From the IMG/VR virus record IMGVR_UViG_3300044641_009805, positions 214,436 through 278,435 of that record: a DNA stretch of 64,000 nt. One strand, 5' to 3'. Within the stretch, counting starts at the first letter, position 1. Each line of letters begins with the position of its first letter. The translations under genes and the position numbers were made by a program. Below are positions 1,371-26,253 of this stretch, piece after piece. The notes beneath the pieces were generated by a model. That model ran no database searches. It was not told the DNA's origin and saw nothing but the letters and a program-made list of their open reading frames with translations.

Positions 1371-2030
1371 ATGCCTGCACAAAATAATAAAGTAGAGCTG
1401 ATCGGGTATTACGGATCTGATGAAACCCATGCGCTTTCAGCGTGGACATCAACATCAAGAGATCTGACTGAAGAAAAAAAGAATAGAATACCTTCCTTGT
1501 TGAAGATGTTAGCTGAGAATGAACACCATTCTGTTTTTGAAAAATCTTCAATTCATTTTCTAGTTACCAGCGATGTTGCTTCACACATACACTTAATCAA
1601 GCATAGAATCGGCGTATCAATCAATGCTGAATCAGCTAGGTACAAGGAATTGAAAGATGATAAGTACTATGTTCCTGTTGATTGGGATAATGAAGAAGCG
1701 ATTGCATACGTGATGCATATGGATCATTCTTTACAAAAATATCATGAAACTCTTGAGAGACTTGTGCGAAAAGGTATGTCACGCAAGCGTGCTAAAGAAT
1801 CTGCAAGATTGTATTTGCCTTATGGTAATCAGATCACTGCTGATGTTATGTTCAATTTTAGAAGCTTTTATCATTTTTTGAAGCTTCGGTATTCTGAGCA
1901 TGCTCAATTAGAGATAAGGAATATCGCACAACAGATGTTGGAACTTGTCGTAGCATCCAAAGCATTTCCTGCTACTCTTGAAGCTTTTGGGTTAGTCGTT
2001 AACGGTGAGATCAGAGAACCTTTTTCTTGA
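1371..2030 (+). CDS. thyX: Flavin-dependent thymidylate synthase ThyX
   Basis: HHSVFE, KHRIGVSINAESARY (ThyX motif), ESARLYLP, NFRSFYHFLKLRYSEHAQLEIR. Confidence 0.93.
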   Translation: MPAQNNKVELIGYYGSDETHALSAWTSTSRDLTEEKKNRIPSLLKMLAENEHHSVFEKSSIHFLVTSDVASHIHLIKHRIGVSINAESARYKELKDDKYYVPVDWDNEEAIAYVMHMDHSLQKYHETLERLVRKGMSRKRAKESARLYLPYGNQITADVMFNFRSFYHFLKLRYSEHAQLEIRNIAQQMLELVVASKAFPATLEAFGLVVNGEIREPFS

Positions 2031-2043
2031 AAGATTAAATCTT

Positions 2044-2625
2044 ATGTCCAAGCTAATAGTAATCGAGGGTCCTGATAGAGTTGGTAAAGCAACTCAAACA
2101 AATTTTCTTTCTAATTTTTTATCATGGAGAGGTTACAAGGTCTTAACGATTGAGGTTCCTATTCGTTCTAATTTTGTTTATCACATCATCTATTGGATGC
2201 TAAGGAATGGGCTAGCAAAAAAGTTTCCAAAATGTTTTCAGTGGTTACAGTATTTTAATAGACAGATTTTTCAATGGTTCAGCTTGAGAAAGCTGGAGAA
2301 AAATTACGATTATATCATAATGGATAGATGGAGTCTATCCACGGTCGTTTATGGTAAAGCAACAGGAGTTCCATCTGAGTTCACTGAAAAATTACATGCT
2401 AGGTTAAGAAGACCTGAGTTCACCTTTTTATTGTTGGGTCCTGCCCACAAACACTCTGCTGAAGACGTGTATGAATCTGATGCTGAGTTGCAAGAGAACG
2501 TGAGAAGAATTTACCTAGAATGGTCAAAAGAGCATCCGGCTTCTTGTAAGGTGATTGACTGCACTCAACCTCGTGAAGTCATTGCAGAAGAGATTAGAAC
2601 CAAATTGAGCGAATTAAATTTTTAA
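2044..2625 (+). CDS. tmk: Thymidylate kinase
   Basis: IEGPDRVGKAT P-loop, IMDRW motif; directly after thyX. Confidence 0.85.
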   Translation: MSKLIVIEGPDRVGKATQTNFLSNFLSWRGYKVLTIEVPIRSNFVYHIIYWMLRNGLAKKFPKCFQWLQYFNRQIFQWFSLRKLEKNYDYIIMDRWSLSTVVYGKATGVPSEFTEKLHARLRRPEFTFLLLGPAHKHSAEDVYESDAELQENVRRIYLEWSKEHPASCKVIDCTQPREVIAEEIRTKLSELNF

Positions 2626-2933: not shown

Positions 2934-3014
2934 ATGATGTTTTGGATTTCTATCAATTTAGCTTTGTTCGTGATTTGTTTCAAGTTTTATATTTCTGGTG
3001 AAAGAGACGAATAA
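2934..3014 (+). CDS. Possible 26 aa hydrophobic peptide
   Basis: MMFWISINLALFVICFKFYISGERDE; TAA overlaps next ATG (TAATG); fills the gap. Confidence 0.3.
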   Translation: MMFWISINLALFVICFKFYISGERDE

Positions 3015-3382
3015 TGTCAGATAAACTTGATGAGATGTGGAAACAGCAAAAGCAATTCATGGATTTACTCAGAGAAAAAAGAGAATTTCCAAGCTTTCCA
3101 GTCGACACTTCGACAAAAGGTGGACAAAAGATATTGAAGTCTATTACTCATGAATGTATGCATGAGTTGTTTGAAGCAAATCTTCTGTTAAAAAATTCGA
3201 AGGATCATCGTGCGACAGATCTACGAGATTTTGATCGCGATAGTTACGTTGAAGAGTTATGTGATGCTCTTCACTACTTTTTTGAAATCGCCATACTTAG
3301 CGGAGTCTCTATTGAAGAGTTATATCAAGCTTACATGAAAAAGGGAGAGATAAACTTCAATAGAGTAGAAAAAGGTTACTAA
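3014..3382 (+). CDS. All-alpha NTP pyrophosphatase (dimeric dUTPase / dCTPase / MazG-like)
   Basis: ECMHELFE...VEELCDALHYF acidic metal-binding helices, YMKKGEINFNRVEKGY C-terminus. Confidence 0.75.
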   Translation: MSDKLDEMWKQQKQFMDLLREKREFPSFPVDTSTKGGQKILKSITHECMHELFEANLLLKNSKDHRATDLRDFDRDSYVEELCDALHYFFEIAILSGVSIEELYQAYMKKGEINFNRVEKGY

Positions 3383-6559: not shown

Positions 6560-6585
6560 CACCATCTTAATAAAAGAATTAAATT

Positions 6586-7419: not shown

Positions 7420-7438
7420 AGTTAAAGGAGTTTCCTCC

Positions 7439-13742: not shown

Positions 13743-13783
13743 ACAAAGTAAAAAAGTTTTCATAATATATCGTATGAAATAAT

Positions 13784-15396: not shown

Positions 15397-18300
15397 ATGA
15401 CGAGAGACAATAAAACAGCTTCACCTACCAGATTCGTGGGTCTTCATGCGCATTCTACATTTTCGCAGTACGATGGTCTCGATTATCCTCAAGAGCACAT
15501 TGATTACGTGCTAGAAAATGGCATGGACGCTTGGTCGTTGACTGACCATGGTAACATGAATGGATTCTGTCACGCTTTTCTTCATGCCGAAAAGATGAAA
15601 AAGTCAGGAAAGAACTTTAAGTTTATCCCTGGCTGCGAGATGTACGTTCATCCTGATCTTACCCAGTGGAAAAAAGATCTGGAAGCGTCCAAGGTAAAAC
15701 CTGCAAAGGACGAGTCCATCATTACTCCTATCACCGCGGTCGTTGATGGCGATGACGAGACGACAGACGTTGGTACGGATGAAGCAGCTTTGACTGTTGA
15801 GAACGAGGACGAGACGAAGTCAGGTAAATACAATGATCCCGTCAAGCGTCGTCATCATCTAGTCGTTCTACCAAAAACCTCAGTAGGCCTTCAACGTCTG
15901 TTCCACCTGGTATCCAGGGGATACATGGAAGGATTTTATCGATTCCCTCGAATCGATTATTCGATGCTAAAAGAAGCAGCAAAAGGTGATCATCTCATGA
16001 TCAGCACAGCTTGTTTAGGTGGTCCTTTGGCTTTCGACGCTTTCGAACAGCTTCAAAAAGTTCCGTTCGAAGAATTGAAACACCAATTGCTTAACGACAG
16101 ATCACTTTTGGATCGTATCATTGCTACGATGAGTAACACTTACGACAAGTTAGTTGATGCCGTCGGTCGCGATAACGTATGTCTTGAACTACAATTCAAC
16201 AAGCTCCCTGCTCAGCATCTTGTTAATCGAGCTCTCATTGAGTTTTCCAAACGAAATTCCCTGCGCGATAGAGTGGTGGTTACTTGCGACTCGCACTATT
16301 CACGACCAGAAAACTGGAAAGAACGAGAGATTTATAAGAAGCTAGGTTGGCTTAACTATCAAAACTTTGATCCAAGCTTGTTGCCTAAGTCTAAGGACGA
16401 TTTAAAATGCGAATTGTATCCCAAAAATGCCAAGCAGGTGTGGGAATCTTATTTGTCTACGACGGAAGGCATGGATTTCTATGACGATGAATTTGTTAAG
16501 GACGCGATTGAAAGAACCCATGATATCGTTCATAACGAATTAGGTGACATTCAGCCTGACAAGACAATGAAGCTTCCTTCTTACGTGATCCCTGAGGGAA
16601 CCACGGAAGATAAGGCACTCGTGGTTGCGTGTAAAAATGGATTGAAGTGGAGAGGTCTAGACTCAAGACAAGACTACATCGACAGAATCAAATATGAGCT
16701 AGGCATCATCAAAGGTAAGAAGTTCTCTAGGTACTTCTTGACGATGAAGGCTATCATGGATATTGCTCGTGAGCATATGTTGATCGGACCAGGTCGTGGA
16801 TCAGCTGCTGGTTCACTTGTAGCCTATGTTCTTGGAATTACGAATTTGGATCCAATTGAATATGATCTTTCTTTTGAAAGATTTTTGAATCCTTCTAGAA
16901 CAGGTGCCCCTGATATTGACTCTGACATCTCTGATCGAGATTTATTGATTGAACTTCTTAGAAAGAATCTTGGCGAAAGGAACGTCATTCCTATCTCCAA
17001 CTACAACACCTTCAGGTTAAAGAGCCTCATTAAAGATATTGCTCGATTCTACAGTATCCCTTTTGAGGAAGTCAACGCTGCTCTTGCTCCTGTCGAGGAT
17101 GATGTCAAGAAGGAGGTCTTTAAACCAGGAACAGACAAGAACTTGTTCGTTCTTACATACGAAGACGCCATCAAATATTCAAAGTCTCTACAAGACTTCA
17201 TTGCTGCACACCCCGAGGTGGCCGAACCAATTGAGATTTTATTCAAGCAAAACCGTTCTTTGGGCCGCCACGCCGGTGGCGTCATCGTATCAGAAGATGT
17301 CGCCGAAAGAATGCCTCTAATCCTTGCTCGCGGTGAGGCCCAGACACCTTGGGTCGAAGGCATGAACTATAAACATCTCGAAGAATTTGGGTGGATCAAG
17401 TTCGATCTGCTAGGTCTTGAAACCTTGCGTATCATCGAACGATGCATCGGCCTAATCCTCGAGCGCCGGGAAGGTGTAAAAAATCCTGATTTTAAGCAAA
17501 TTCGAGCGTGGTTTGATAAGCATATGGATCCGAAGAACATTGATCTGAACGATCAAAAAGTCTACGAATATGTTTACCACGAAGGTAGGTTCGCAGGTAT
17601 CTTCCAGCTAACACAAACAGGTGCTCAGCGGCTGTTTACGAAGGCTAAACCACGTAGCATCATCGACATTGCCACTCTTACTTCGATCTATCGTCCTGGT
17701 CCTCTTGCGGCTAACGTGGATAAACTTTATATTGATGCAAAGAATAATCCTGACAAGATTGATTATCAACATCCGTTGATCAAAAAAGTCCTCGAGTCTA
17801 CATACGGTTGTATCATCTTTCAAGAGCAGACCATGAGGTTATGTTCTGTGGTGGCGGGATTCCCTGAGGCTGAGACTGACACCATCCGTCGTAACATTAT
17901 GAAGCGCAGCGCGTCTAAGAAAGACGATGCTGCAGCGGATGCGAGGAAAGCAAAAGAAGAGTTCGTGTTAGGTGCTGTGAAGAATGGCGTAAACGAGAAG
18001 GTCGCATCTGAACTATACGATAAGATTCTATTCTTCTCTGGATACGGCTTTAATGCCTCGCATGCCGTGTCTTATGCAATTGATTCTTACTATTGCGCTT
18101 GGCTCTTGACTTATTATGAAGAGGAATGGCTATGCGCATATCTCGAATCGATGTCAGGAAACGACGAGAAACGAGCCAAAGCTTTTTCAGAAGTAAAAGC
18201 GCTAGGATATAAGATCGTTCCAATTGACGTAAACTACGCGACAAAGAGCTGGACAATCTTGGAAGGTAAACGATTCATGCCAAGCTTCTTGTCTTGCAAG

Positions 18301-18981
18301 GGAATTGGAGAGGCTGCTATCGATGAAATCGTCGAGAACAGACCTTACAAGAGTGTCGAAGAGATGTTGTGGAATGATGATGGTTCATGGAAACATTCCA
18401 AATTTAACAAGCGAGCTTTTGAAGGTCTCATCTCCATCAGAGCGTTTGACTCTCTTGACTGCGTAGGTGAAGGAAAAACATTTAACAGCTACAAACAGAT
18501 GCATCACATCTTGATTGATAAAGGTGCCGATATCAAGAAAACTTCAAAGAAAAATCCTACTCTCGGTATGGAAAACTTTCGAAATCTTTTGATAGAAACA
18601 AATGACATGGATGAGTGGACTCGTGGGGAGTTGGTTGACAACAGCGTGAAATATCTTGGATCATTCAACTCTAACATTTTAGTTTCTCAAGAACTGATTG
18701 CAAAGCTAGAATCTAAAGGTGTCAAATCCATCGACCTCATCGAGCAAACTGACGTTTATTGGTTCATTATTTCTGACGTAAAAGAAAAAAAGACGAAGAA
18801 CGGAAAGCCATACTTGCTTCTGACGGCAATAGGCCTTGAAGGCCAAACCCGTCGGATCTTTTGTTGGGGATGGGATGGCCGAACTGAGTTGCCGAAGTAC
18901 TCCACATGCATAGCAGAAATTACTGTCGATAATTACGGTAATAAAACTTTTATGAGCAAGGTTAAGGTAATCGATGAATAA
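15397..18981 (+). CDS. dnaE: DNA polymerase III alpha subunit (family C)
   Basis: PHP motifs LHAHS, TDHG, GCE; GRGSAAGS, PDIDSD, KFDLLGL, GYGFNASH; C-terminal OB fold. Confidence 0.96.
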   Translation: MTRDNKTASPTRFVGLHAHSTFSQYDGLDYPQEHIDYVLENGMDAWSLTDHGNMNGFCHAFLHAEKMKKSGKNFKFIPGCEMYVHPDLTQWKKDLEASKVKPAKDESIITPITAVVDGDDETTDVGTDEAALTVENEDETKSGKYNDPVKRRHHLVVLPKTSVGLQRLFHLVSRGYMEGFYRFPRIDYSMLKEAAKGDHLMISTACLGGPLAFDAFEQLQKVPFEELKHQLLNDRSLLDRIIATMSNTYDKLVDAVGRDNVCLELQFNKLPAQHLVNRALIEFSKRNSLRDRVVVTCDSHYSRPENWKEREIYKKLGWLNYQNFDPSLLPKSKDDLKCELYPKNAKQVWESYLSTTEGMDFYDDEFVKDAIERTHDIVHNELGDIQPDKTMKLPSYVIPEGTTEDKALVVACKNGLKWRGLDSRQDYIDRIKYELGIIKGKKFSRYFLTMKAIMDIAREHMLIGPGRGSAAGSLVAYVLGITNLDPIEYDLSFERFLNPSRTGAPDIDSDISDRDLLIELLRKNLGERNVIPISNYNTFRLKSLIKDIARFYSIPFEEVNAALAPVEDDVKKEVFKPGTDKNLFVLTYEDAIKYSKSLQDFIAAHPEVAEPIEILFKQNRSLGRHAGGVIVSEDVAERMPLILARGEAQTPWVEGMNYKHLEEFGWIKFDLLGLETLRIIERCIGLILERREGVKNPDFKQIRAWFDKHMDPKNIDLNDQKVYEYVYHEGRFAGIFQLTQTGAQRLFTKAKPRSIIDIATLTSIYRPGPLAANVDKLYIDAKNNPDKIDYQHPLIKKVLESTYGCIIFQEQTMRLCSVVAGFPEAETDTIRRNIMKRSASKKDDAAADARKAKEEFVLGAVKNGVNEKVASELYDKILFFSGYGFNASHAVSYAIDSYYCAWLLTYYEEEWLCAYLESMSGNDEKRAKAFSEVKALGYKIVPIDVNYATKSWTILEGKRFMPSFLSCKGIGEAAIDEIVENRPYKSVEEMLWNDDGSWKHSKFNKRAFEGLISIRAFDSLDCVGEGKTFNSYKQMHHILIDKGADIKKTSKKNPTLGMENFRNLLIETNDMDEWTRGELVDNSVKYLGSFNSNILVSQELIAKLESKGVKSIDLIEQTDVYWFIISDVKEKKTKNGKPYLLLTAIGLEGQTRRIFCWGWDGRTELPKYSTCIAEITVDNYGNKTFMSKVKVIDE

Positions 18982-19507
18982 CATGCATACTGTCGTAATT
19001 TTTGAAGGATGTGATAAAGTTGGTAAGACTGAAATGGCTCGTGAGCTTTCGCGACGAATGGAGATTCCATATTTCAAGAATAAATCAGAATGGAAAGCGT
19101 TTAGCTCAGATCCAGATTATTTCGTGAAGGCTCTTCGATACGGAGACCCTTACTTCTACACTTTTCTTCGAGACACCAAGACGTCTGTTATTCTTGATCG
19201 ATCGTACCCTTCAGAGTGGGTGTATTCAAGAGTTTACGATAGAAAGACCGATCATGATGCTCTGTCTCATATTGATTTTCTTGCAGCTTCTTTTGGCGTT
19301 AAGATAGTCATTCCGTATAGGACTTCTTATTCTGGTCTAAAAGACGATATTCATAACATAGGCGAATATCATCTACAAAAATTGTCAGACATGTATGAAG
19401 AATTTGCAAAGTGGACCAAATGTGACGTACTACGCTTTTGCATTGATTCTGAAAACCTAGAATGGGAAATGGAGACCATTCGTAAATTCTTGAAAAAGGA
19501 GGCATGA
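18974..19507 (+). CDS. Second dNMP kinase (thymidylate kinase-like), probably for a modified nucleotide
   Basis: FEGCDKVGKT P-loop, ILDRSYPSEWVY; coupled between dnaE and glycosyltransferase. Confidence 0.75.
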   Translation: MNNMHTVVIFEGCDKVGKTEMARELSRRMEIPYFKNKSEWKAFSSDPDYFVKALRYGDPYFYTFLRDTKTSVILDRSYPSEWVYSRVYDRKTDHDALSHIDFLAASFGVKIVIPYRTSYSGLKDDIHNIGEYHLQKLSDMYEEFAKWTKCDVLRFCIDSENLEWEMETIRKFLKKEA

Positions 19508-20532
19508 TGCGCATCGGAATTAGTTATTGGGGTTTTTGTGAGCCTTTTGGAGCATCAGGAGAAGCAAAAACGCCTGATGGTCATCGGTATGGTCGTCCTA
19601 TTTTTGTGAACGCAGCTGTCGCATCAGGACATCAGATTTATGCGTTACAAAAGCGTAGAGAAGTTGTGCCATATAAAAACATCAATTATGATGAGGGATT
19701 TCCTGACATAGATGTTTTATTTGTTGAGTGGCGATGGCCAACTTATAAAAATTCAGGAGAAAATCCTGCCGAACCTGATCTGCTCAGGCAAAATGAGCTT
19801 CTTCGGCACTATCACGGAAAGATTCCTGTCGTTATTTGGGATTGTGATTATAAGGTGACACCAGAAGATGAGCTAGCATGGCCTAAAGCTATAATTGCAG
19901 ATCCCGCATTTGAACCAAGATATTTGACCAGAAAAAGAGAAAGATTGATGTTTTGGACAGATTGGCAATTTTTGCTGCAACCGTCCAACGTGTCTTTTGA
20001 ATATGGCTATGTGGGAAACAATTATGAAAGACCAGAAGCATTTTATCAGTACTATTCCTCACCATCAAGAGAGCTAAGAAATCTGGGAATACAGACGACG
20101 GTTCATGGTAATTGGTTAGAAGTTTCTCCTGAGAGAGAACATCCTACATCATTGATAAAACAGCATCCCTTCGTTTCATTCGCTCAACGCTTGAATTTTC
20201 ATGATTCAATGAAAAGGTTGAATTCTTTTATCTGCGCAACACACATAACCAAGCCAGAATACGCCAAACGTGGGTTTGCGTCTCCTCGTTACTTAGAAAA
20301 TATGGCTGTGGGCACGCCTGCTTTGGTCCCATCAGAGTTTTTGATCCCAAACTTATTAGGAAGTGAGTGGACAGTATCGACGTCAGAACAAGTAATTGCT
20401 CAAGTTAAATACATCAGCAAACTTTCTTATGAATTCAGGGTTTCTTTAGTCAAAGAACAAATGACGATTTTGAAAAATAAGAATGTATTTTCTGTAAGCG
20501 ACGTAATAGATTTCTTGGAGACACTCGTATGA
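19504..20532 (+). CDS. GT-B glycosyltransferase resembling T4 DNA beta-glucosyltransferase
   Basis: GYVGN, VHGNW, ICATHITKPEYAKRGFASPRYLENMAVGTPALVPSEF parallels the recalled BGT C-terminal domain. Confidence 0.65.
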   Translation: MMRIGISYWGFCEPFGASGEAKTPDGHRYGRPIFVNAAVASGHQIYALQKRREVVPYKNINYDEGFPDIDVLFVEWRWPTYKNSGENPAEPDLLRQNELLRHYHGKIPVVIWDCDYKVTPEDELAWPKAIIADPAFEPRYLTRKRERLMFWTDWQFLLQPSNVSFEYGYVGNNYERPEAFYQYYSSPSRELRNLGIQTTVHGNWLEVSPEREHPTSLIKQHPFVSFAQRLNFHDSMKRLNSFICATHITKPEYAKRGFASPRYLENMAVGTPALVPSEFLIPNLLGSEWTVSTSEQVIAQVKYISKLSYEFRVSLVKEQMTILKNKNVFSVSDVIDFLETLV

Positions 20533-21530
20533 TGAAAAAAGATAAGGTTCTAATCACAGGCGTAGCTGGACTTCTTGGGGCAAATTTTTCTAGATATCTG
20601 TTGTCCAGAGGTTATGATGTCGTTGGGATTGATGATTTAAGCGGCGGATATCTAGATTCTGTTCCAAAAGAAATGACATTCTACGACGTAGACTTGGTAG
20701 ATCGTCATAAAACAGAAGAGGTATTTGCAAAAGAAAAACCTGATTATGTTTTCCATTTTGCTGCGTACGCAGCAGAAGGATTGAGTCCTTTCATTAGAAA
20801 TTACAACTACACAAACAACGTGTTAGCTTCCGCTAATGTAATTAATGCTTGTGTAAATCATGATATCAAAAAGATTGTTTTTACCTCATCGATGGCGGTA
20901 TATGGAGTAGGCAATCCACCCTTTACAGAAGATCAGCTACCAACCCCAGAGGATCCTTACGGTATTGCGAAATATGCAGTAGAGATGGATCTCAAACTTG
21001 CACATGAAATGTTTGGACTAAGATACAGCATTGTTCGCCCGCACAACGTTGTTGGCATTTATCAAAATATTTGGGATAGGTATCGAAACGTTATAGGCAT
21101 TTGGATTCGTAAAGCTCTTGTTGGAGAACCGCTGACTATCTTTGGAGACGGTACACAAAAACGTGCTTTTTCAGACATCAAGTTCTATATGGCTCCTTTT
21201 GAAAAGCTTATGACGTCTTTTGACGGTGAAACTTTCAACATAGGAGCTGATAAAGATTTCACAATTAACGAAGCTTGCGATCTCGTGATGGACGTTGCAG
21301 CTGAGCTTGGAGTTAAAGCGACCAAGGTTCATTTAGAAAAACGCAATGAAGTGCACACTGCATACTGCGATCACAGTAAAGCTCATAAGCTGTTAGGGTT
21401 TAAAGATGAAACTAATCTTAGAGATATGATTAAAGAAATGTTTGTCTGGGCTATGAAGCAGCCTGATAGACAAATAAAGAACATGGATTATGAGATTGAA
21501 AAGAACATGTACTCTTTTTGGAAGAAATGA
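20529..21530 (+). CDS. NAD-dependent NDP-sugar epimerase/dehydratase (extended SDR)
   Basis: ITGVAGLLG, HFAA, TSSMAVYG, PYGIAK (YxxxK), RPHNVVG, GDGTQKRAF. Confidence 0.92.
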   Translation: MMKKDKVLITGVAGLLGANFSRYLLSRGYDVVGIDDLSGGYLDSVPKEMTFYDVDLVDRHKTEEVFAKEKPDYVFHFAAYAAEGLSPFIRNYNYTNNVLASANVINACVNHDIKKIVFTSSMAVYGVGNPPFTEDQLPTPEDPYGIAKYAVEMDLKLAHEMFGLRYSIVRPHNVVGIYQNIWDRYRNVIGIWIRKALVGEPLTIFGDGTQKRAFSDIKFYMAPFEKLMTSFDGETFNIGADKDFTINEACDLVMDVAAELGVKATKVHLEKRNEVHTAYCDHSKAHKLLGFKDETNLRDMIKEMFVWAMKQPDRQIKNMDYEIEKNMYSFWKK

Positions 21531-22315
21531 TTATGACTTTTCCTGAAAAATTAGCTGATAGAGAAAAATACATTTTTGATCAAGTTTTAGCTGGCAATTT
21601 TGATGCAGAATGGGTTCCTCTCGAATTTTCTTCAGGAGGAAGAACCATTAAATTCAATGTGATGAATGATGCATTGAAAATTGACGGCATAAGAGTTAAT
21701 GTATCTGCAGAACTTCAGCAAAAGTTAGCAGATGTATTTAATGCGTCTTTATTGACAACACATATCGCTGACTTAATGTTTATCAATGCCACGCACCGAG
21801 TAGAGCCCTGTCCTATGACGATATCTTCGACAGTCGATTCTATGATTAAACACAGCAAAATGGTCGATGGAAAAGTTGGGTTTAATGTGACAGGATTAGT
21901 AGCTTCTCCTGGAAAGCATTGGATTTTAGATAAGAAACTAGACTTAAATCCTAGAAGAGCTTGTAACTATGGGTGGCATTTCGTTGGTACGAACTACAAG
22001 GGTATAAAAGGTCACCCAACTGGATCTAAGCAGAACAAGCTAAATGGATCGACGATGTCAGTGATCCAGCCGAATGCAACTGCCCATGATATGAAACATT
22101 CTGATTATTCTCAAATTTGTCAGCTTGTTTCTCAAGCTTGTTGGATCGACGGTGTCATACACCGTTTATCTGACGTTCTGCAAGATCCAACGAATTGTGA
22201 TCTTGCTACCGCTAATGGTCCTTTAAGTTTTGTTAGACAACCTGGTACGTCTCCTTTTGTCGGAACTTCTGTTATGTTTCCTGTAAAAATTACTTCGCAA
22301 GGAGGAATTGTATGA
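21527..22315 (+). CDS. Hypothetical protein
   Basis: Long ORF coupled by ATGA overlap; NYGWH, HSDYSQ conserved-looking blocks. Confidence 0.75.
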   Translation: MIMTFPEKLADREKYIFDQVLAGNFDAEWVPLEFSSGGRTIKFNVMNDALKIDGIRVNVSAELQQKLADVFNASLLTTHIADLMFINATHRVEPCPMTISSTVDSMIKHSKMVDGKVGFNVTGLVASPGKHWILDKKLDLNPRRACNYGWHFVGTNYKGIKGHPTGSKQNKLNGSTMSVIQPNATAHDMKHSDYSQICQLVSQACWIDGVIHRLSDVLQDPTNCDLATANGPLSFVRQPGTSPFVGTSVMFPVKITSQGGIV

Positions 22316-22500
22316 CGTATGAATACGAATGCAAAGCTTGCAATCATCAGTTTGAAGCGGAACAATCAATCAAAGATCCACCATTAACAAACTGCCCTCG
22401 TTGTAAGACTGACTTTTTAAGAAGGCTTATAAGCAAATCAACATTTGTTTTGAAGGGCTCTGGGTGGGCTGCTGATAACTATTCTTCAAAATCTTCTTAG
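22312..22500 (+). CDS. FmdB-family zinc-ribbon protein
   Basis: YEYECKACNHQFE..CPRC..RLIS..FVLKGSGW. Confidence 0.85.
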   Translation: MTYEYECKACNHQFEAEQSIKDPPLTNCPRCKTDFLRRLISKSTFVLKGSGWAADNYSSKSS

Positions 22501-23225
22501 TAAGTAGGTAGCGTGTGTTGTCTCAGCGGACAATCACTTTTGTTGCGAGATGATCTAGAAGCAGGATGCCCAGGTTTCAAGAGGTTGTGTAAGTCTTCTC
22601 CTTCTTTGCTAGCAAAGACTGATTTGACTTCGCCTGTTTCACTATTAAAGATAATAGTATACCCGCCTCTGGACATATCTAGAGGCTTTTTTATAGTGTT
22701 CATATAATCGAACCTACCTGCTTTACTCATCTCCCTATCAAACCAAGCTTCAAGCACAAAGTTAGAGACAGAAACGGGCGTGCCATTGACATCAATCTCA
22801 TACGAGTCTCCTTGAACGGGGTCGCACAATTCCAATGCTACGAAAGTATGATCTCCTCTATTCGACCAAAGATTGACGTAGGGATTGTAGAATGTTTCAA
22901 GTATTTCGTGAGATAGGACGACCGAAACAGCGTGAGTTCCCTTCAACGTAGTTCCGCCATGCTTCAATAACGGGTCCGTAAAAACTCTACACCAAACTCT
23001 TCCGTCAGGATCTTGCGTATGGTATCCAAGAGCACCAGCAACATCTGGAGAGTTAATAAGAACAACGGGGAATCCATCATTACCACCTACCTTTATCTCC
23101 CATGGCATCCTTTCCAGGAGCGGGGCTGCTTGTTGCGTTAACTGTATTTTGCAGGCTTCAACCATGAGGTTCAAATCTGCTTCGGAAACGTTGGTCGATT
23201 TATTGATGACATTAAACGTTCTCAT
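22497..23225 (-). CDS. Hypothetical protein, possible zincin-like peptidase
   Basis: GYHT, LSHEILE, ELCDPVQ..VSNFV. Confidence 0.7.
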   Translation of the reverse strand: MRTFNVINKSTNVSEADLNLMVEACKIQLTQQAAPLLERMPWEIKVGGNDGFPVVLINSPDVAGALGYHTQDPDGRVWCRVFTDPLLKHGGTTLKGTHAVSVVLSHEILETFYNPYVNLWSNRGDHTFVALELCDPVQGDSYEIDVNGTPVSVSNFVLEAWFDREMSKAGRFDYMNTIKKPLDMSRGGYTIIFNSETGEVKSVFASKEGEDLHNLLKPGHPASRSSRNKSDCPLRQHTLPTY

Positions 23226-23238: not shown

Positions 23239-23277
23239 AAACAAGCTTGTTTATAATTTAAAAAGGTGTATAATCAT

Positions 23278-24246
23278 ATGAGAATTTTATTGACGGGTGG
23301 TGCGGGCTTCATAGGCAGTAACGTCGCAAAAAGGTTGTTGGCAGAAAATATAGAGTTTGACATCGTTGACGATCTATCGAACGGTCACATGTCGTTTGTT
23401 GATCCTTCGCTGCTGGATCGTAACATTACGATTGCCAGCTTCGACTCCGAAACAATCTTAGCAAAGATAAGGTCTGGATTGTACGATGTTGTTATACACT
23501 TGGCGGCCGTCCCGCGTGTGAGTTATTCCGTCGATTTTCCCCTTGAGTCTCACAACGCAAACGTGACAGCAACAATGAAATTGATTGATGCTTGTCGAGG
23601 AAAGATTAAACGTTTTGTCTTTGCATCCTCGTCCTCTGTTTATGGAGGTGCTGACCAGCTACCAACTCCTCCTGATACCGCAAAGAATCCTAAATCACCT
23701 TACGCTTTGCAAAAATCTATAATTGAAGATTATTTGAAGATGTATTACGATCTTTATGGGTTCGATTCAGTCAGCCTAAGGTTCTTTAACGTCTTTGGTC
23801 CAAATCAATTAGGAAATTCTCCTTATTCCACAGCGGTTTCTGCGTGGGTTAATGCAATTATGAAGGGGACTTCGATGCGTTCTGACGGAGACGGAACGCA
23901 ATCTCGCGACATGTGTTATGTTGATAATGTTGCCGATGCATGCGTAAGAGCAGCAAAGGCAAATTTCCCATTAAAGTCTGAAACTTTAAATGTGGCTTGT
24001 GGCGACAGGACAACAAATAGAGAAATTTTGCAATTTTTGTTGAAAAAATTTCCTGATGCGAAATACCATGATGCTCCTTGGAGACCTGGCGATGTCATGC
24101 ACACTCAAGCTGATATTTCTAGGACAAAAGAAGTTTTAGGTTACACTCCCCTGGTGTATTTTTGGGAAGGATTGGAAAAAACAATCCAGTGGTATCAGGA
24201 CAATTGGGAACTAATTAAAACGTTGAGTGATAAAGAGAATATATGA
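23278..24246 (+). CDS. NAD-dependent NDP-sugar 4-epimerase (WbpP/GalE-like extended SDR)
   Basis: LTGGAGFIGS, HLAA, ASSSSVYG, SPYALQK, LRFFNVFGP, GDGTQSRD. Confidence 0.92.
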   Translation: MRILLTGGAGFIGSNVAKRLLAENIEFDIVDDLSNGHMSFVDPSLLDRNITIASFDSETILAKIRSGLYDVVIHLAAVPRVSYSVDFPLESHNANVTATMKLIDACRGKIKRFVFASSSSVYGGADQLPTPPDTAKNPKSPYALQKSIIEDYLKMYYDLYGFDSVSLRFFNVFGPNQLGNSPYSTAVSAWVNAIMKGTSMRSDGDGTQSRDMCYVDNVADACVRAAKANFPLKSETLNVACGDRTTNREILQFLLKKFPDAKYHDAPWRPGDVMHTQADISRTKEVLGYTPLVYFWEGLEKTIQWYQDNWELIKTLSDKENI

Positions 24247-25241
24247 AAGTTTTTTCTAGCTTCACTGAAGCCTACTATGATCTGCTTCTAGACGTCTACA
24301 AGCATCCTGACTTTGTTTCTTCTCCTCGAGGGCAGAAGATCAGAGAAAAGTTGGGCGTATCATTCAGGATTTCTAATCCTCTTGATAGATTACCGTATGT
24401 AGAGCAAAGAGACTTTAGCTTATCATATTTTGTTGCAGAGTCTTTGTGGTATCTTTCTGGAAACGATTCCACTGAATGGATATCGAATTATTCTTCTTTT
24501 TGGAAGAACATTTCTGATGATGGCACTACAGCTAACAGCGCTTACGGCGCCAGGATTTTTAATCCTCATTCAAGAATTGCTGGTCAAATCGATCCTTCTT
24601 GGACACAATGGGATTACATCTTGAATGAACTGACGACAGATCCAGATTCTCGCCGAGCCGTCGTTCATATTAGATCTCCTCAGGATTCTATCCTAGCCTC
24701 AAAGGACGTTCCTTGCACTTTGTCTTTGCAGTTTTTTTTGCGTAACGATCAGGTTCACATGATAGTCTCTATGAGATCATCTGATCTCATCTTAGGAATT
24801 GCGTATGATGTTCCTGCATTCACGTTGTTTCAAGAGTTGTTGGCTAATCAATTATCGGATAGGCTGAACAGGTCTATAAGCGTTGGTGAGTATACTCACG
24901 TAAGCAATTCTTTGCATATTTATGAAAAGCATTTTGGAATGGTAGAAGAAATTCTAAAAAAACGAGAGTTTTTTAGTTTAGAAATGCCGAAGCTACCAAA
25001 GGGTAAACTACCTTTAGAATATATTTTGGAGCAAGAATCCAAGTGCAGAAATTGTCAGACTATTGATGAATTAAAACAGTTGGCTTCTAATCTCAATGCT
25101 GGTTCTGAATATTGGAATGATTGGTGCAAGATTTTAATTTCGCATAGAGCAAATAAGTTAAAAGGTGTTGATTCTGAAAACTTTAAGTTAGTCCTCTTGA
25201 AATCAACGGAATTTAACGGCTATAAATTTTTTAACAAATAA
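24243..25241 (+). CDS. Thymidylate synthase homolog of dCMP-modifying type (dCMP hydroxymethylase-like)
   Basis: SRRAV, DVPC (catalytic Cys), MRSSDLILGIAYD with Asp at the Asn177-equivalent site, SLHIYE; ThyX already present. Confidence 0.8.
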   Translation: MKVFSSFTEAYYDLLLDVYKHPDFVSSPRGQKIREKLGVSFRISNPLDRLPYVEQRDFSLSYFVAESLWYLSGNDSTEWISNYSSFWKNISDDGTTANSAYGARIFNPHSRIAGQIDPSWTQWDYILNELTTDPDSRRAVVHIRSPQDSILASKDVPCTLSLQFFLRNDQVHMIVSMRSSDLILGIAYDVPAFTLFQELLANQLSDRLNRSISVGEYTHVSNSLHIYEKHFGMVEEILKKREFFSLEMPKLPKGKLPLEYILEQESKCRNCQTIDELKQLASNLNAGSEYWNDWCKILISHRANKLKGVDSENFKLVLLKSTEFNGYKFFNK

Positions 25242-25247
25242 GGTGTT

Positions 25248-25811
25248 ATGTCAAATCCTCAATTCATACTCTATACGGGTCCAATGTTTTCTAGCAAAAC
25301 AACCGGACTGCTGTCTTCAATAGATCGTTTTAAATACCAAAACAAACGAGTAGCTGTGTTTAAGCCGCGCTTAGATGATAGATACAGTGAAGAGTATATT
25401 TGTACTCATAGCGGGTGGAAAGTACCTGCCATTTGCATAAAAGAAGGAACCGACATACTTGAAAAATTGTCAGAGATGAATGAAAATCCTCATGTCGTGG
25501 CTGTTGATGAAGCATTCATGATACCAGGTATTTCGAAAGTTTTAGTCTGGCTTTATAGAAGTGGATATTCGATAGTGGTATCGTCATTAGATCTATCAGC
25601 CAGCGGAAAACCGTTCAATGAAATTGAAAAAATGCTGCCTTGGGCAACCCAGGTGGAAAAACGGACGGCGGTCTGTACAGTCTGCAGCAAAGATGCTCAT
25701 TACACATACAAAAAGCAGATTGGAGGAAATGAAATAGAGGTCGGCGGAGCTGAACTTTATGAACCAAGATGTTTAAAGTGTCATCCAGTAATATTTGATC
25801 CGGCTAGCTGA
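25248..25811 (+). CDS. tdk: Thymidine kinase (type II)
   Basis: GPMFSSKT, FKPRLDDRY, VDEAF, CTVC..YEPRCLKC. Confidence 0.92.
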   Translation: MSNPQFILYTGPMFSSKTTGLLSSIDRFKYQNKRVAVFKPRLDDRYSEEYICTHSGWKVPAICIKEGTDILEKLSEMNENPHVVAVDEAFMIPGISKVLVWLYRSGYSIVVSSLDLSASGKPFNEIEKMLPWATQVEKRTAVCTVCSKDAHYTYKKQIGGNEIEVGGAELYEPRCLKCHPVIFDPAS

Positions 25812-25812
25812 A

Positions 25813-26253
25813 ATGATTGATAGGAAAAAATTAAAGCTTTCTGTTTTCATGCAAATGTGCAGGGACCTGTCTGTTCTTTCATATGATCCGAAATACAAGG
25901 TAGCTTCAATTATTATCACTCCAGACTTTAGAGAAGTTTGTGCTATCGGGTATAACGGAGGATACAAAGGCGGGCCTAACGAGAGAAGTTCTTTAGACCA
26001 CGGTAACTCAGGATTTCTCCATGCCGAAGAAAATGCTCTTTTTCATCTTTGCAAGCCTTATGAACTTCGATCTGGACTAATCATGCTATGTACTCATAAG
26101 CCTTGCTCAATGTGTGCCCGTCGCATCGTGAATAGTGGAATTCAAAATGTTGTCTATGAAGTCGATTATTTAGATAAAGAGTCTGCTACAGATGAGATAT
26201 TCAAGAATAGCAATACTTCTTGTAAAAAGTATGAAGATATAATTTCTTTATAA
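25813..26253 (+). CDS. dCMP deaminase
   Basis: GYNG, HAEENA, PCSMC zinc-deaminase motifs. Confidence 0.9.
   Translation: MIDRKKLKLSVFMQMCRDLSVLSYDPKYKVASIIITPDFREVCAIGYNGGYKGGPNERSSLDHGNSGFLHAEENALFHLCKPYELRSGLIMLCTHKPCSMCARRIVNSGIQNVVYEVDYLDKESATDEIFKNSNTSCKKYEDIISL

What the first reader, a model, noticed from the sequence alone, without database searches (positions are those of the whole stretch)
24243..25241. TS homolog carries the cytosine-specifying Asp
Seen: RSSDLILGIAYD (Asp codon at 24807-24809) aligns residue-for-residue with RSCDVFLGLPFN of E. coli ThyA; catalytic Cys retained in DVPC. Established: Asn177 in ThyA versus Asp179 in T4 dCMP hydroxymethylase sets dUMP versus dCMP specificity. 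Inference: substrate is dCMP; product could be hm-dCMP, methyl-dCMP or hydroxy-dCMP, which the sequence alone cannot decide.
Basis: partly seen in the sequence, partly recalled or inferred. Interest (0 to 1): 0.65.

Follow-up and report, generated by a model that had tools for sequence, protein, structure and literature searches.

The report
Jumbo-phage dCMP hydroxymethylase gene
A lake-water jumbo phage carries a thymidylate-synthase look-alike whose active site matches enzymes that turn dCMP into 5-hydroxymethyl-dCMP, and it sits in a gene cassette (kinase, glycosyltransferase, sugar epimerases) that probably builds sugar-decorated cytosine in the phage DNA; this is a known anti-restriction strategy found here in a new phage group.

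Summary
ORF 24243-25241 (+, 332 aa) is a ThyA-fold protein (Pfam PF00303, E 2.6e-28). Codon 24807-24809 (GAT) encodes Asp189 at the position of E. coli ThyA Asn177, and the catalytic Cys is Cys158 (DVPC).

It can:
- Asp at position 143, as in the T4, SPO1 and MilA hydroxymethylases.
- Asp kept at position 169; all tested flavin-dependent 5-hydroxy-dCMP synthases have Asn there.
- Arg137 and Ser179, the deoxyribose signature. MilA, which prefers CMP, has Lys and Ala.
- All of these residues are invariant in 121 homologues.

The phage has its own ThyX, so this gene is not needed for dTMP. The surrounding cassette is Pol III alpha, a Tmk-like kinase, a GT-B glycosyltransferase (pLDDT 93; matches T4 beta- and alpha-glucosyltransferases), two UDP-hexose 4-epimerase-like SDRs, the TS homolog, TK and dCMP deaminase. 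Elsewhere in the window lies a gp56-like NTP pyrophosphatase. One relative has a carbamoyltransferase in the glycosyltransferase's slot; the characterised enzyme of that type acts only on 5hmC.

Best reading: a folate-dependent dCMP 5-hydroxymethylase that feeds glycosylated hmC DNA. It is a new member of a known kind, and no biochemistry has been done.

The parts
24243..25241 (+). ThyA-fold pyrimidine C5-modifying enzyme, predicted dCMP 5-hydroxymethylase (332 aa). The catalytic core is about residues 1-245, followed by a C-terminal extension of about 85 aa that is shared with the family and aligns with part of the SPO1 gp29 tail.
24807..24809 (+). GAT codon for Asp189, at ThyA Asn177. This residue specifies a cytosine substrate.
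   Evidence: rule from PMC13326640 and PMC5175136
24705..24716 (+). Codons for Asp155-Val-Pro-Cys158. Asp155 sits at ThyA Leu143 (hydroxymethylase signature) and Cys158 at the catalytic Cys146.
   Evidence: rule
24777..24785 (+). Codons for Ser179-Ser180-Asp181. Ser179 sits at ThyA Ser167 (deoxyribose signature). Asp181 sits at ThyA Asp169 and is retained, so this is not the D169N 5-hydroxy-dCMP synthase type.
   Evidence: rules
24651..24656 (+). Codons for Arg137-Arg138, at ThyA Arg126/Arg127. MilA has Lys at the first position.
18974..19507 (+). Tmk-like nucleotide kinase (177 aa), the candidate kinase for the modified dCMP. It directly follows the DNA polymerase gene.
   Evidence: phrog_761 E 3e-11; 27% identical over 150 aa to RB69 ORF045, the kinase of the RB69 cytosine-hypermodification cluster; conserved at this position in relatives
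19504..20532 (+). GT-B fold glycosyltransferase (342 aa), the candidate DNA (hmC) glycosyltransferase.
   Evidence: AF2 pLDDT 93.2, pTM 0.90. Foldseek matches 7fg9, 3mbo, 5ze7, T4 beta-GT 1qkj (TM 0.65) and T4 alpha-GT 1xv5, all with probability 1.00. Weak PF13524 match.
20529..21530 (+). SDR enzyme resembling UDP-glucose 4-epimerase (333 aa).
   Evidence: PF01370 E 4.5e-49; best PDB match 4zrm, a UDP-glucose 4-epimerase, E 1e-42
21527..22315 (+). Conserved 262 aa protein of unknown function with a C-type-lectin-like/FGE-like fold. The ORF as listed starts at 21518; homologues start at the Met at 21527.
   Evidence: pLDDT 92; no Foldseek PDB match; VIA Z 6-7.7 to Bd2740-C, PvdO, Mtd, EgtB and the FGE paralogue; 315 homologues
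22312..22500 (+). Small zinc-ribbon protein (62 aa), conserved in the cassette.
   Evidence: PF09723 E 2.6e-14; present in L012-L015 and L023
22497..23225 (-). Conserved 242 aa protein of unknown function on the opposite strand.
   Evidence: No Pfam or PHROG match; found only in unnamed phage clusters; conserved in L012-L015 and L023
23266..24246 (+). SDR enzyme resembling the WbgU/WbpP UDP-GlcNAc 4-epimerases (326 aa). Its stop codon overlaps the TS-homolog start (ATGA).
   Evidence: PF01370 E 2.5e-48; PDB 6dnt E 6e-55, WbgU E 4e-51, WbpP E 2e-47; junction sequence
25248..25811 (+). Thymidine kinase. It starts 6 nt after the TS-homolog stop.
   Evidence: PF00265 E 1.6e-39; junction sequence
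25795..26253 (+). dCMP deaminase, which splits the dCMP pool towards dUMP as T4 cd does.
   Evidence: PF00383 E 8.7e-16; phrog_174 E 2e-29
3014..3382 (+). Small all-alpha NTP pyrophosphatase (122 aa), the candidate dCTPase that would clear dCTP and supply dCMP.
   Evidence: PF08761 27-30 bits, above cut-off; phrog_12184 nucleotide pyrophosphohydrolase E 1e-13; 33% identical over 42 aa to the C-terminus of T4 gp56; 68% identical orthologue in L008
1371..2030 (+). ThyX, a flavin-dependent thymidylate synthase and the phage's own route to dTMP.
   Evidence: PF02511 E 3.7e-37; phrog_85
2005..2625 (+). Canonical thymidylate kinase, next to ThyX.
   Evidence: PF02223 E 2.5e-15
15397..18981 (+). Pol III alpha-type replicative DNA polymerase (1194 aa). 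It heads the conserved block.
   Evidence: PF07733, PF17657, PF02811 and PF14579

Best explanation
The ORF encodes a folate-dependent deoxycytidylate 5-hydroxymethylase. Inferred mechanism, by homology with ThyA, T4 gp42 and MilA: Cys158 attacks C6 of dCMP, and Asp189 reads and protonates the N3/N4 face of cytosine. Methylene-tetrahydrofolate donates the one-carbon unit to C5, with Asp181 holding the pterin. The exocyclic methylene intermediate is then captured by water rather than by hydride, because the polar Asp155 replaces the water-excluding Leu143 of ThyA. The product is 5-hydroxymethyl-dCMP plus THF. Inferred pathway: the gp56-like NTP-PPase clears dCTP to dCMP. dCMP is then split between this enzyme and the dCMP deaminase, whose dUMP goes to ThyX and Tmk to make dTTP. 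The Tmk-like kinase next to the polymerase phosphorylates hm-dCMP, and the Pol III alpha polymerase incorporates hm-dCTP. The adjacent GT-B glycosyltransferase then probably decorates hmC in DNA, using a UDP-hexose (or HexNAc) adjusted by the two 4-epimerase-like SDRs. The effect would be to protect phage DNA from host nucleases. What is shown here: fold-family membership, all active-site residues, family-wide invariance of those residues, synteny, and the GT-B fold. What is inferred: the substrate, the product, the role of each neighbouring gene, and the modified state of the DNA.
For: (1) Family and nearest relatives: PF00303 scores E 2.6e-28. The best solved relative is the hydroxymethylase MilA at E 3e-41, against 1e-15 for any ThyA and 5e-14 for T4 gp42. 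Phage relatives include SPO1 gp29, a dUMP hydroxymethylase. (2) Signature residues: D143, C146, T147, M165, R166, S167, D169, D177, H207 and Y209. This equals T4 gp42 at every discriminating position. It differs from ThyA (L143, H147, Q165, N177), from Xp12 (N143, P147, L165) and from RB69 gp48 (A80, N169, V173, F209). The rules come from PMC13326640. (3) Deoxy preference: R137 and S179, against K133' and A176 in CMP-preferring MilA and BcmA; the A176S/K133R double mutant of MilA switches to dCMP. (4) All these residues are invariant in 121 homologues. (5) The enzyme is not needed for dTMP, because ThyX and Tmk lie in the same window. It is the only PF00303 hit in the record, and its best NCBIfam TS equivalog match scores 84 bits against a cut-off of 327. 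(6) Context: a kinase, a GT-B glycosyltransferase and then the TS homolog, the same order as DLP3 078-080, RB69 045-048 and RL38J1 214-216. The GT fold was established. (7) Relatives keep the backbone but swap the tailoring gene. L008 carries a TobZ/Nol-like carbamoyltransferase in that slot. The characterised phage enzyme of this type acts on 5hmdC DNA and 5hmdCTP but not on 5mdCTP or 5hmdUTP, and in that study carbamoyltransferase and TS domains co-occurred only on cytosine-modified contigs. (8) Enterococcus phage VPE25 has the same signature next to a T4-like beta-GT, and its DNA resists bisulfite conversion at cytosines. (9) No DHFR was found in the record. A hydroxymethylase and ThyX both regenerate THF, whereas Xp12's methylase sits beside a DHFR.
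Against: No enzyme of this ~330 aa family has been assayed. The position-143 rule is a correlation based on few enzymes, and the only methylase data point (Xp12) has a polar Asn there rather than Leu. My assignment of the Xp12 gene as the dCMP methylase is itself an inference. The D169N rule has been validated only in the positive direction, on about a dozen enzymes. The deep phylogeny is unresolved, so the tree does not place this family with T4 gp42. The dCTPase assignment rests on a partial domain match. The SDR next to the TS homolog is also retained in relatives that lack the 342 aa glycosyltransferase (L008, L010, L014, L025), so the epimerases may serve another purpose. The record is 84% complete, so absences such as DHFR are weak evidence. 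There is no direct evidence that this phage's DNA is modified, and no usable expression evidence for this gene.
Confidence: 0.74

Rival explanations
1. It is a dCMP 5-methyltransferase of the Xp12 type. The substrate and first steps are the same, but hydride transfer from the folate gives 5-methyl-dCMP, and the phage DNA carries 5mC.
For: Asp177 and Asp169 are shared with the Xp12 TS homolog, as are Ser168 and Tyr176. The sequence rules separating methyl from hydroxymethyl products rest on few enzymes.
Against: Position 143 is Asp, as in all listed hydroxymethylases, whereas Xp12 has Asn and ThyA has Leu. Positions 147 and 165 also differ from Xp12. ThyA and Xp12 form a supported clade (98/96) that excludes this family. 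No DHFR was found, whereas Xp12 has one beside its enzyme. The neighbouring glycosyltransferase, and the carbamoyltransferase in L008, need a hydroxyl acceptor, which 5mC lacks.
Confidence: 0.07
2. It is a flavin-dependent 5-hydroxy-dCMP synthase like RB69 gp48 and DLP3 gp80, and the glycosyltransferase attaches sugar through an ether link to 5hoC.
For: The cassette order (kinase, GT, TS homolog) is the one seen in the 5hoC phages. Those enzymes also have an acidic residue at position 143 and Asp at 177, and they also have MilA as their best structural match.
Against: The diagnostic D169N is absent: Asp181 is invariant in 121 homologues. Trp80, Gly173 and Tyr209 are also of the folate-enzyme type, unlike RB69 gp48. 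The L008 relative pairs the same enzyme family with a carbamoyltransferase, and the characterised enzyme of that type is specific for the hydroxymethyl group.
Confidence: 0.07
3. It is an ordinary thymidylate synthase (dUMP to dTMP), as database names for homologues say.
For: Sources name relatives 'thymidylate synthase', and the Pfam family is PF00303.
Against: Asn177, Leu143, His147 and Gln165 are all replaced. The best NCBIfam TS equivalog match scores 84 bits against a cut-off of 327, and all eight listed models fall below their cut-offs. The phage already encodes ThyX. The database names are automatic family labels.
Confidence: 0.02
4. It is a ribonucleotide (CMP) hydroxymethylase like MilA and BcmA, feeding a nucleoside metabolite or an RNA modification rather than DNA.
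For: MilA is by far the closest solved relative, at E 3e-41.
Against: Both ribose-preference residues are of the deoxy type: Arg137 in place of Lys133' and Ser179 in place of Ala176. The corresponding MilA double mutant loses all CMP activity. No MilB-like N-glycosidase was seen nearby. The neighbours are DNA-precursor genes: polymerase, TK, dCMP deaminase and kinases.
Confidence: 0.03
5. It acts on dCMP but makes a C5 adduct not yet described, for example by capturing the methylene intermediate with a nucleophile other than water. The variable neighbours would then build on that adduct.
For: The family is unassayed. It has its own C-terminal extension of about 85 aa. The cassette also contains conserved proteins of unknown function (a 262 aa CLec/FGE-like protein, a 242 aa protein, and a ~430 aa protein in relatives).
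Against: Nothing in the active site departs from the T4 gp42 pattern. The simplest reading explains all the neighbours.
Confidence: 0.07

Closest known systems
T4 gp42 deoxycytidylate 5-hydroxymethylase (PDB 1B5E, 6A9A), within the T4 hmC pathway (gp56 dCTPase, cd, gp1 kinase, alpha/beta-GT)
   Same: The active-site signature is identical at positions 143, 146, 147, 165, 166, 167, 169, 177, 207 and 209. The pathway logic is the same: an NTP-PPase, a dCMP deaminase, a kinase and a GT-B glycosyltransferase whose fold matches T4 BGT and AGT.
   Different: Sequence identity is only about 27% (phmmer E 5e-14). This protein is 332 aa against 246 aa because of a C-terminal extension. The kinase is Tmk-like rather than gp1-like. 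dTMP comes from ThyX rather than a ThyA-type td. The polymerase is Pol III alpha rather than family B. The glycosyltransferase shows no sequence-level similarity to T4 GTs, and two sugar 4-epimerase-like genes are present.
MilA, CMP 5-hydroxymethylase of mildiomycin biosynthesis (PDB 5B6D, 5JNH)
   Same: It is the closest solved relative (E 3e-41 over residues 3-240). It shares Asp143, Asp169 and Asp177, and it is longer than ThyA at the C-terminus.
   Different: MilA has Lys133' and Ala176, which give its CMP preference. This protein has Arg and Ser, the deoxy signature. MilA is a Streptomyces secondary-metabolism enzyme, not a phage DNA-precursor enzyme.
TS homologs paired with 5hmC carbamoyltransferase (MetaGPA study, Yang et al. 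2021, PMC8670742)
   Same: A member of the same ~330 aa family (P0088, 59% identical, with an identical active site) sits two genes downstream of a carbamoyltransferase on a 297 kb phage contig. dCMP deaminase and NTP-PPase genes co-occur there, as that study describes.
   Different: The window's phage has a GT-B glycosyltransferase plus epimerases in that slot instead of a carbamoyltransferase. I could not test whether L008's carbamoyltransferase belongs to the characterised clade, because that sequence exists only as typed text in the paper and was therefore not used.
RB69 gp48 and DLP3 gp80 5-hydroxy-dCMP synthases, with their kinase-GT-TS cassettes (Lee et al. 2026, PMC13326640)
   Same: The cassette order is the same: Tmk-like kinase, GT-B glycosyltransferase, TS homolog. 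The kinase is 27% identical to RB69 ORF045. The glycosyltransferase matches the same PDB entries reported for those phages' DNA glycosyltransferases.
   Different: Those enzymes carry D169N and use flavin and O2. This protein keeps Asp169, Trp80, Gly173 and Tyr209. The sugar genes here are 4-epimerase-like SDRs, not an arabinose pathway.
Enterococcus phage VPE25 and Bacillus phage G gp319 TS homologs
   Same: They are 30-35% identical to this protein and share the D143/T147/M165/D169/D177 signature. Both lie near glucosyltransferase genes. VPE25 DNA is cytosine-modified.
   Different: The enzymes themselves have not been assayed. They come from different phage lineages and use different GT types.

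Membership tests
ThyA-fold pyrimidine C5-modifying superfamily (Pfam PF00303) | Significant profile match above the curated cut-off | tested here: met
   99.4 bits against a cut-off of 24.3, E 2.6e-28, profile positions 2-227 of 266
ThyA-fold pyrimidine C5-modifying superfamily (Pfam PF00303) | Catalytic core residues: Cys146 nucleophile, Glu58, Tyr94, Arg166, Arg126'/127', His207, Tyr209 | tested here: met
   C158, E66, Y101, R178, R137/R138, H225 and Y227 are all present and invariant in 121 homologues
Canonical thymidylate synthase (dUMP to dTMP, EC 2.1.1.45) | Asn177 (uracil recognition) | tested here: not met
   Asp189 occupies this position
Canonical thymidylate synthase (dUMP to dTMP, EC 2.1.1.45) | Hydrophobic Leu143 that excludes water; His147; Gln165 | tested here: not met
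   Asp155, Thr159 and Met177 occupy these positions
Canonical thymidylate synthase (dUMP to dTMP, EC 2.1.1.45) | Score above the NCBIfam equivalog cut-offs | tested here: not met
   The best match scores 84 bits against a cut-off of 327, and all eight listed TS models fall below their cut-offs
dCMP 5-hydroxymethylase (T4 gp42-type function) | Asp at position 177 (cytosine substrate) | tested here: met
   Asp189, invariant
dCMP 5-hydroxymethylase (T4 gp42-type function) | Acidic residue at position 143 (admits water to the methylene intermediate) | tested here: met
   Asp155, invariant; T4 has D, SPO1 has D, MilA has D (rule)
dCMP 5-hydroxymethylase (T4 gp42-type function) | Folate-type Asp169 retained | tested here: met
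   Asp181, invariant
dCMP 5-hydroxymethylase (T4 gp42-type function) | Deoxyribose signature: Ser167 and Arg126' | tested here: met
   Ser179 and Arg137 (rule)
dCMP 5-hydroxymethylase (T4 gp42-type function) | Catalysis: dCMP + CH2-THF + H2O gives hm-dCMP + THF | not testable with these tools
   This needs an enzyme assay with LC-MS
dCMP 5-hydroxymethylase (T4 gp42-type function) | Monophyly with T4 gp42 | tested here: inconclusive
   Deep nodes have support below 80 and branches are long. Only the ThyA+Xp12 clade is supported, and it excludes this family.
5-hydroxy-dCMP synthase (RB69 gp48 / DLP3 gp80 type) | D169N substitution (diagnostic in all tested enzymes) | tested here: not met
   Asp181 is present here, while RB69 gp48 shows Asn in the same alignment
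5-hydroxy-dCMP synthase (RB69 gp48 / DLP3 gp80 type) | Bound flavin and O2-derived oxygen | not testable with these tools
   This needs purified protein and 18O2 labelling
CMP hydroxymethylase (MilA/BcmA type) | Lys133' and Ala176, which confer ribose preference | tested here: not met
   Arg137 and Ser179 occupy these positions
dCMP methyltransferase (Xp12 type) | Signature shared with the Xp12 enzyme at positions 143, 147 and 165, and grouping with ThyA | tested here: not met
   D/T/M here against N/P/L in Xp12. The ThyA+Xp12 clade excludes this family. This rests on a single reference enzyme, whose gene assignment I inferred.
T4-type cytosine-replacement pathway | dCTP-clearing pyrophosphatase | tested here: inconclusive
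   The 122 aa PF08761 protein at 3014-3382 matches only the C-terminal third of the profile and of T4 gp56. Its specificity is unknown.
T4-type cytosine-replacement pathway | Dedicated nucleotide kinase for the modified dNMP | tested here: inconclusive
   A second Tmk-like gene at 18974-19507 is related to RB69 ORF045. Its substrate is unknown, and its Pfam matches fall below cut-off.
T4-type cytosine-replacement pathway | DNA glycosyltransferase acting on the C5 hydroxyl | tested here: inconclusive
   The GT-B fold is established, with T4 BGT and AGT among the matches. A DNA acceptor has not been shown.

The most novel reading that the evidence does not exclude
This widespread group of freshwater jumbo phages uses one conserved dCMP hydroxymethylase and kinase as a fixed platform, and swaps the tailoring gene in a single genomic slot. 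The alternatives are a GT-B glycosyltransferase with two UDP-sugar 4-epimerases, a carbamoyltransferase, or an unknown protein of about 430 aa. Close relatives would then carry chemically different hmC derivatives. The window's phage would make a glycosyl-hmC with a sugar other than glucose (Gal- or HexNAc-type) that has not been described on DNA. The conserved CLec/FGE-fold protein and the 242 aa protein would be additional, new hypermodification enzymes.
Probability: 0.3. Interest if true: 0.65.

Novelty: new member of a known kind. Interest (0 to 1): 0.42.

Why it matters
Databases label this protein and its 900-plus homologues 'thymidylate synthase'. The evidence here says they are dCMP hydroxymethylases that mark a cytosine-hypermodification system in abundant lake jumbo phages. 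That matters in three practical ways. Hypermodified DNA resists many restriction enzymes, can resist Cas nucleases, and can distort nanopore basecalling and bisulfite or enzymatic methylation calls in metagenomes. The variable tailoring slot is a compact place to look for new DNA-modifying enzymes and sugars. The residue-based call (143/169/177 plus 126/167) is also a quick, testable annotation rule. Conceptually it extends the T4 paradigm to a new lineage that uses Pol III alpha and ThyX, rather than overturning anything.

Tried and rejected
- Megablast of 12 kb around the gene against 50,697 phage records found no match, so there is no close cultured relative.
- The maximum-likelihood tree of 23 TS-family proteins has unresolved deep nodes and long branches. 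I use it only for the supported ThyA+Xp12 clade and make no claim of monophyly with T4 gp42.
- phmmer against the PDB found nothing for the GT-like protein or the Tmk-like kinase, so the GT was resolved by fold prediction instead.
- The ESM-Atlas feature search for the 265 aa and 242 aa proteins returned only unnamed phage clusters.
- Foldseek of the 262 aa model against the PDB gave no match at E <= 0.001. VIA-align gave consistent but modest C-type-lectin/FGE-like hits (Z <= 7.7), which I report only as a lead.
- Searches of the record found no MazG (PF03819) or DHFR (PF00186). The record is 84% complete, so these absences are weak evidence.
- PRA-PH (PF01503) gave only a sub-threshold hit on the same small NTP-PPase.
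- Read laying on RNA-type libraries was uninformative. Two of the libraries are probably DNA. The one true metatranscriptome gave a single 242-nt contig over the TK/dCMP-deaminase junction and nothing on the TS homolog, so there is no evidence about its expression.
- The ~430 aa protein that replaces the glycosyltransferase in some relatives shows no similarity to the GT and has no PHROG match.
- I did not compare L008's carbamoyltransferase with the characterised enzyme. That sequence is available only as typed letters in the paper, so the step was left out.
- I did not run the large representative-protein search. The word search and family scans already settled the family.
- There are no tRNAs in the window and no Rfam hits in 44-64 kb.


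Full report
**1. The observation**

The ORF at 24243-25241 (+) is real: 332 aa with an ATG start. It matches Pfam PF00303 (thymidylate synthase family) at E 2.6e-28, 99 bits against a cut-off of 24.3. Its best NCBIfam thymidylate synthase equivalog match scores 84 bits against a cut-off of 327, and all eight listed models fall below their cut-offs.

I aligned it with E. coli ThyA, T4 gp42, RB69 gp48, SPO1 gp29 and the Xp12 TS homolog. The segment RSSDLILGIAYD lies gap-free over ThyA RSCDVFLGLPFN. Codon 24807-24809 is GAT, giving Asp189 at ThyA Asn177. DVPC contains Cys158 at the catalytic Cys146.

**2. What the genome is**

The window is the last 64 kb of a 278,435-bp viral record that is about 84% complete, so this is a jumbo phage. 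It has no close cultured relative. Near-identical DNA occurs in lake-water and freshwater metagenomes from well over a dozen studies.

The TS homolog belongs to a large, uniform family. There are 929 hits at E <= 1e-10, about 325-345 aa long, and many lie on contigs of 100-300 kb.

**3. Substrate and product, read from the active site**

Two papers give tested rules:
- In the MilA study (PMC5175136), enzymes that use cytosine have Asp at ThyA position 177. Enzymes that prefer ribonucleotides (MilA, BcmA) have Lys133' and Ala176 where deoxy enzymes have Arg and Ser. The MilA A176S/K133R double mutant loses CMP activity and keeps dCMP activity.
- In Lee et al. 2026 (PMC13326640), N177D marks dCMP use. 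An acidic residue at position 143 in place of Leu correlates with products other than methyl (T4 gp42, MilA). D169N is the signature of the flavin/O2-dependent 5-hydroxy-dCMP synthases, and every D169N enzyme tested made 5hoC.

The window protein reads E58, W80, Y94, R126, R127, D143, C146, T147, M165, R166, S167, S168, D169, G173, Y176, D177, H207 and Y209. Compared with enzymes of known product:

| Enzyme (product) | Relation to the window protein |
|---|---|
| T4 gp42 (hm-dCMP) | Identical at every discriminating position |
| ThyA (dTMP) | Differs at 143, 147, 165, 177 |
| Xp12 homolog (5mC phage) | Differs at 143, 147, 165 |
| RB69 gp48 (5ho-dCMP) | Differs at 80, 169, 173, 209 |

All of these residues are invariant across 121 family members at 54-99% identity. 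By sequence similarity, the nearest solved protein is the hydroxymethylase MilA (E 3e-41). ThyA proteins reach at best 1e-15 and T4 gp42 reaches 5e-14.

It predicts a deoxy-specific, cytosine-specific, folate-type hydroxymethylase.

A maximum-likelihood tree did not resolve the deep branches. Its one useful result is that the methyl-forming ThyA and Xp12 enzymes group together (98/96) apart from this family.

**4. Genome context**

The gene is not needed for thymidylate synthesis. A ThyX (1371-2030) and a canonical Tmk (2005-2625) lie in the same window, and this is the only PF00303 gene in the record.

It sits in a tightly packed operon. Its start overlaps the stop of the upstream gene (ATGA), and TK starts 6 nt after its stop. 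The order of genes is:

| Window coordinates | Gene |
|---|---|
| 15397-18981 | Pol III alpha polymerase |
| 18974-19507 | Tmk-like kinase |
| 19504-20532 | 342 aa protein (GT-B glycosyltransferase) |
| 20529-21530 | UDP-glucose 4-epimerase-like SDR |
| 21527-22315 | Conserved 262 aa unknown |
| 22312-22500 | Zinc-ribbon protein |
| 22497-23225 (- strand) | 242 aa unknown |
| 23266-24246 | WbgU/WbpP-like SDR |
| 24243-25241 | TS homolog |
| 25248-25811 | TK |
| 25795-26253 | dCMP deaminase |

The 342 aa protein folds with pLDDT 93 into a GT-B glycosyltransferase. Its matches include T4 beta-glucosyltransferase (TM 0.65) and T4 alpha-glucosyltransferase. They also include the same PDB entries (7fg9, 3mbo, 5ze7, 7qsg, 2gej) that Lee et al. 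report for phage DNA glycosyltransferases.

The order kinase, first glycosyltransferase, TS homolog is exactly that of DLP3 078-080, RB69 045-048 and RL38J1 214-216. The kinase is 27% identical to RB69 ORF045.

A 122 aa all-alpha NTP pyrophosphatase at 3014-3382 passes the PF08761 cut-off and resembles the C-terminus of T4 gp56 dCTPase. No DHFR was found. That fits enzymes that regenerate THF (a hydroxymethylase and ThyX). By contrast, Xp12's TS homolog has a DHFR beside it.

**5. Comparative evidence**

I examined nine further loci carrying family members. They keep the backbone: Pol III alpha, kinase-like gene, a variable segment, TS homolog, TK, dCMP deaminase and SOD-like gene. They differ in the slot after the kinase:
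- L012, L015 and L023, like the window, have the 342 aa glycosyltransferase cassette.
- L010, L013, L024 and L025 have an unrelated protein of about 430 aa in that slot, and L014 carries one elsewhere in the segment. It has no family match.
- L008 (a 297 kb contig; TS homolog 59% identical with an identical active site) has a TobZ/Nol-type carbamoyltransferase.

Yang et al. 2021 (PMC8670742) showed that a phage carbamoyltransferase found next to a TS homolog carbamoylates 5hmC in DNA and 5hmdCTP. It does not act on 5mdCTP or 5hmdUTP. In that study, carbamoyltransferase and TS domains co-occurred only on cytosine-modified contigs. Both a glycosyltransferase and a carbamoyltransferase need a hydroxyl acceptor, which argues against a methyl product.

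The nearest homologues from isolated phages tell the same story. VPE25 (35% identical, same signature) lies beside a T4-like beta-GT, and its DNA resists bisulfite conversion at cytosines. Phage G gp319 lies near an alpha-glucosyltransferase, a Tmk and a dCMP deaminase.

**6. Mechanism proposed**

Residues and context are shown; the chemistry is inferred by homology.
- Cys158 adds to C6 of dCMP, and Asp189 pairs with the N3/N4 face of cytosine.
- Methylene-THF, held by Asp181 and the Trp80 region, alkylates C5.
- After elimination of THF, water adds to the exocyclic methylene, because Asp155 replaces the hydrophobic Leu143. The product is hm-dCMP.
- The NTP-PPase would return dCTP to dCMP. The deaminase diverts part of that dCMP to dUMP, which ThyX and Tmk convert towards dTTP.
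- The Tmk-like kinase would phosphorylate hm-dCMP, and the phage polymerase would incorporate hm-dCTP.
- The GT-B enzyme would then glycosylate hmC in DNA, using a UDP-sugar that the two 4-epimerase-like SDRs interconvert.

My odds: about 0.74 that the enzyme is a dCMP hydroxymethylase; about 0.5 that the 342 aa glycosyltransferase acts on the DNA; and lower still for any particular sugar.

**7. Caveats**

- No member of this family has been assayed.
- The position-143 rule rests on few enzymes. The single methylase reference (Xp12) has Asn there, not Leu, and I inferred which Xp12 gene is the methylase from its annotation and its Asp177.
- The SDR next to the TS homolog also persists in relatives that lack the 342 aa glycosyltransferase, so its link to DNA modification is uncertain.
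- The dCTPase call rests on a partial match.
- There is no direct evidence that this phage's DNA is modified, and the read data say nothing useful about expression.

**8. Novelty**

Phage dCMP hydroxymethylases and hmC tailoring by glycosylation or carbamoylation are established. The residue logic is published, and similar metagenomic TS homologs have been linked to cytosine modification.

This is therefore a new member of a known kind, in a new lineage (freshwater jumbo phages with Pol III alpha and ThyX). What may be new is the swappable tailoring slot and the epimerase-equipped glycosylation cassette, which includes two conserved proteins of unknown function. That is the novel case, at about 0.3 probability.

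Noticed in passing
Outside the window: G000:C1:208787-208993 and 210290-210478 (loci L018, L019): The trimeric dUTPase (PF00692) is found as two halves about 1.3 kb apart, in separate open frames (profile positions 5-70 and 67-129). This suggests a gene interrupted by an intron, an intein or a homing-endonuclease insertion.
   Followed up: no
window 15397-18981; compare L010 1-5090, L012 808-3940, L013 1-4383, L015 1-4717: The Pol III alpha polymerase is one intact 1194 aa ORF here and in L008, L014 and L025. In several relatives it is split into 2-4 ORFs by inserted genes (a Hom_end_hint intein signature in L010; an ORF of about 311 aa with a faint Phage_endo_I hit in L012 and L015). The polymerase gene is a hotspot for mobile insertions.
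   Followed up: partly
window 21527-22315 (+): A conserved 262 aa cassette protein folds confidently (pLDDT 92) but has no Foldseek PDB match. VIA-align gives consistent, modest hits (Z 6-7.7) to C-type-lectin-like/FGE-type folds: Bd2740-C, PvdO, Mtd, TvpA, EgtB and the FGE paralogue. Cys146, His151, His187, His191, Cys198 and Cys205 are invariant. Its function is unknown.
   Followed up: partly
window 22497-23225 (-): This 242 aa ORF is the only minus-strand gene in the block. It is conserved at the same position in L012-L015 and L023, has no family match, and contains an HEILE motif. Its function is unknown.
   Followed up: partly
L013 4952-6238, L024 5039-6328, L025 4703-6007, L010 6033-7370, L014 7737-9023: In some relatives an unrelated protein of about 430 aa, with no Pfam or PHROG match, occupies the slot that holds the glycosyltransferase in the window. 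It is a candidate alternative DNA-tailoring enzyme.
   Followed up: partly
window 10246-14851: Upstream of the polymerase lies a block with a phrog_19290 unknown (417 aa), a 561 aa protein with a weak RNA-ligase-like N-terminal part and a cytidylyltransferase-like C-terminal part, a metallophosphoesterase, and a full-length IMPDH/GMP-reductase family protein (PF00478, E 2e-92). This may be nucleotide salvage or RNA repair.
   Followed up: no
window 26657-27385, 30760-31521, 31518-31898: A Fe/Mn superoxide-dismutase-like protein, a carbon-nitrogen hydrolase (PF00795) and a weak pterin-4a-carbinolamine-dehydratase-like protein follow the nucleotide genes. They are syntenic in all relatives examined. 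Their role in a phage is unclear.
   Followed up: no
window 5547-7969: An N6/N4-type DNA methyltransferase (PF01555, E 6e-32) is followed by a metallophosphoesterase and an HNH endonuclease. It is not a C5-cytosine methylase, so it does not conflict with replacement of cytosine at C5.
   Followed up: partly
window about 38000-64000: GC content rises from about 0.36-0.40 to 0.45-0.49. From about 50 kb to the end the sequence is a dense run of small + strand ORFs (60-100 aa), with no tRNAs and no Rfam hits. This looks like a typical phage small-gene region near the contig end.
   Followed up: partly
P0028 (62% identical homologue): One family member is deposited as 'thymidylate synthase [Chlamydiae bacterium]' from a MAG. 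Given the phage synteny of the family, this is probably a phage contig binned into a bacterial MAG.
   Followed up: no
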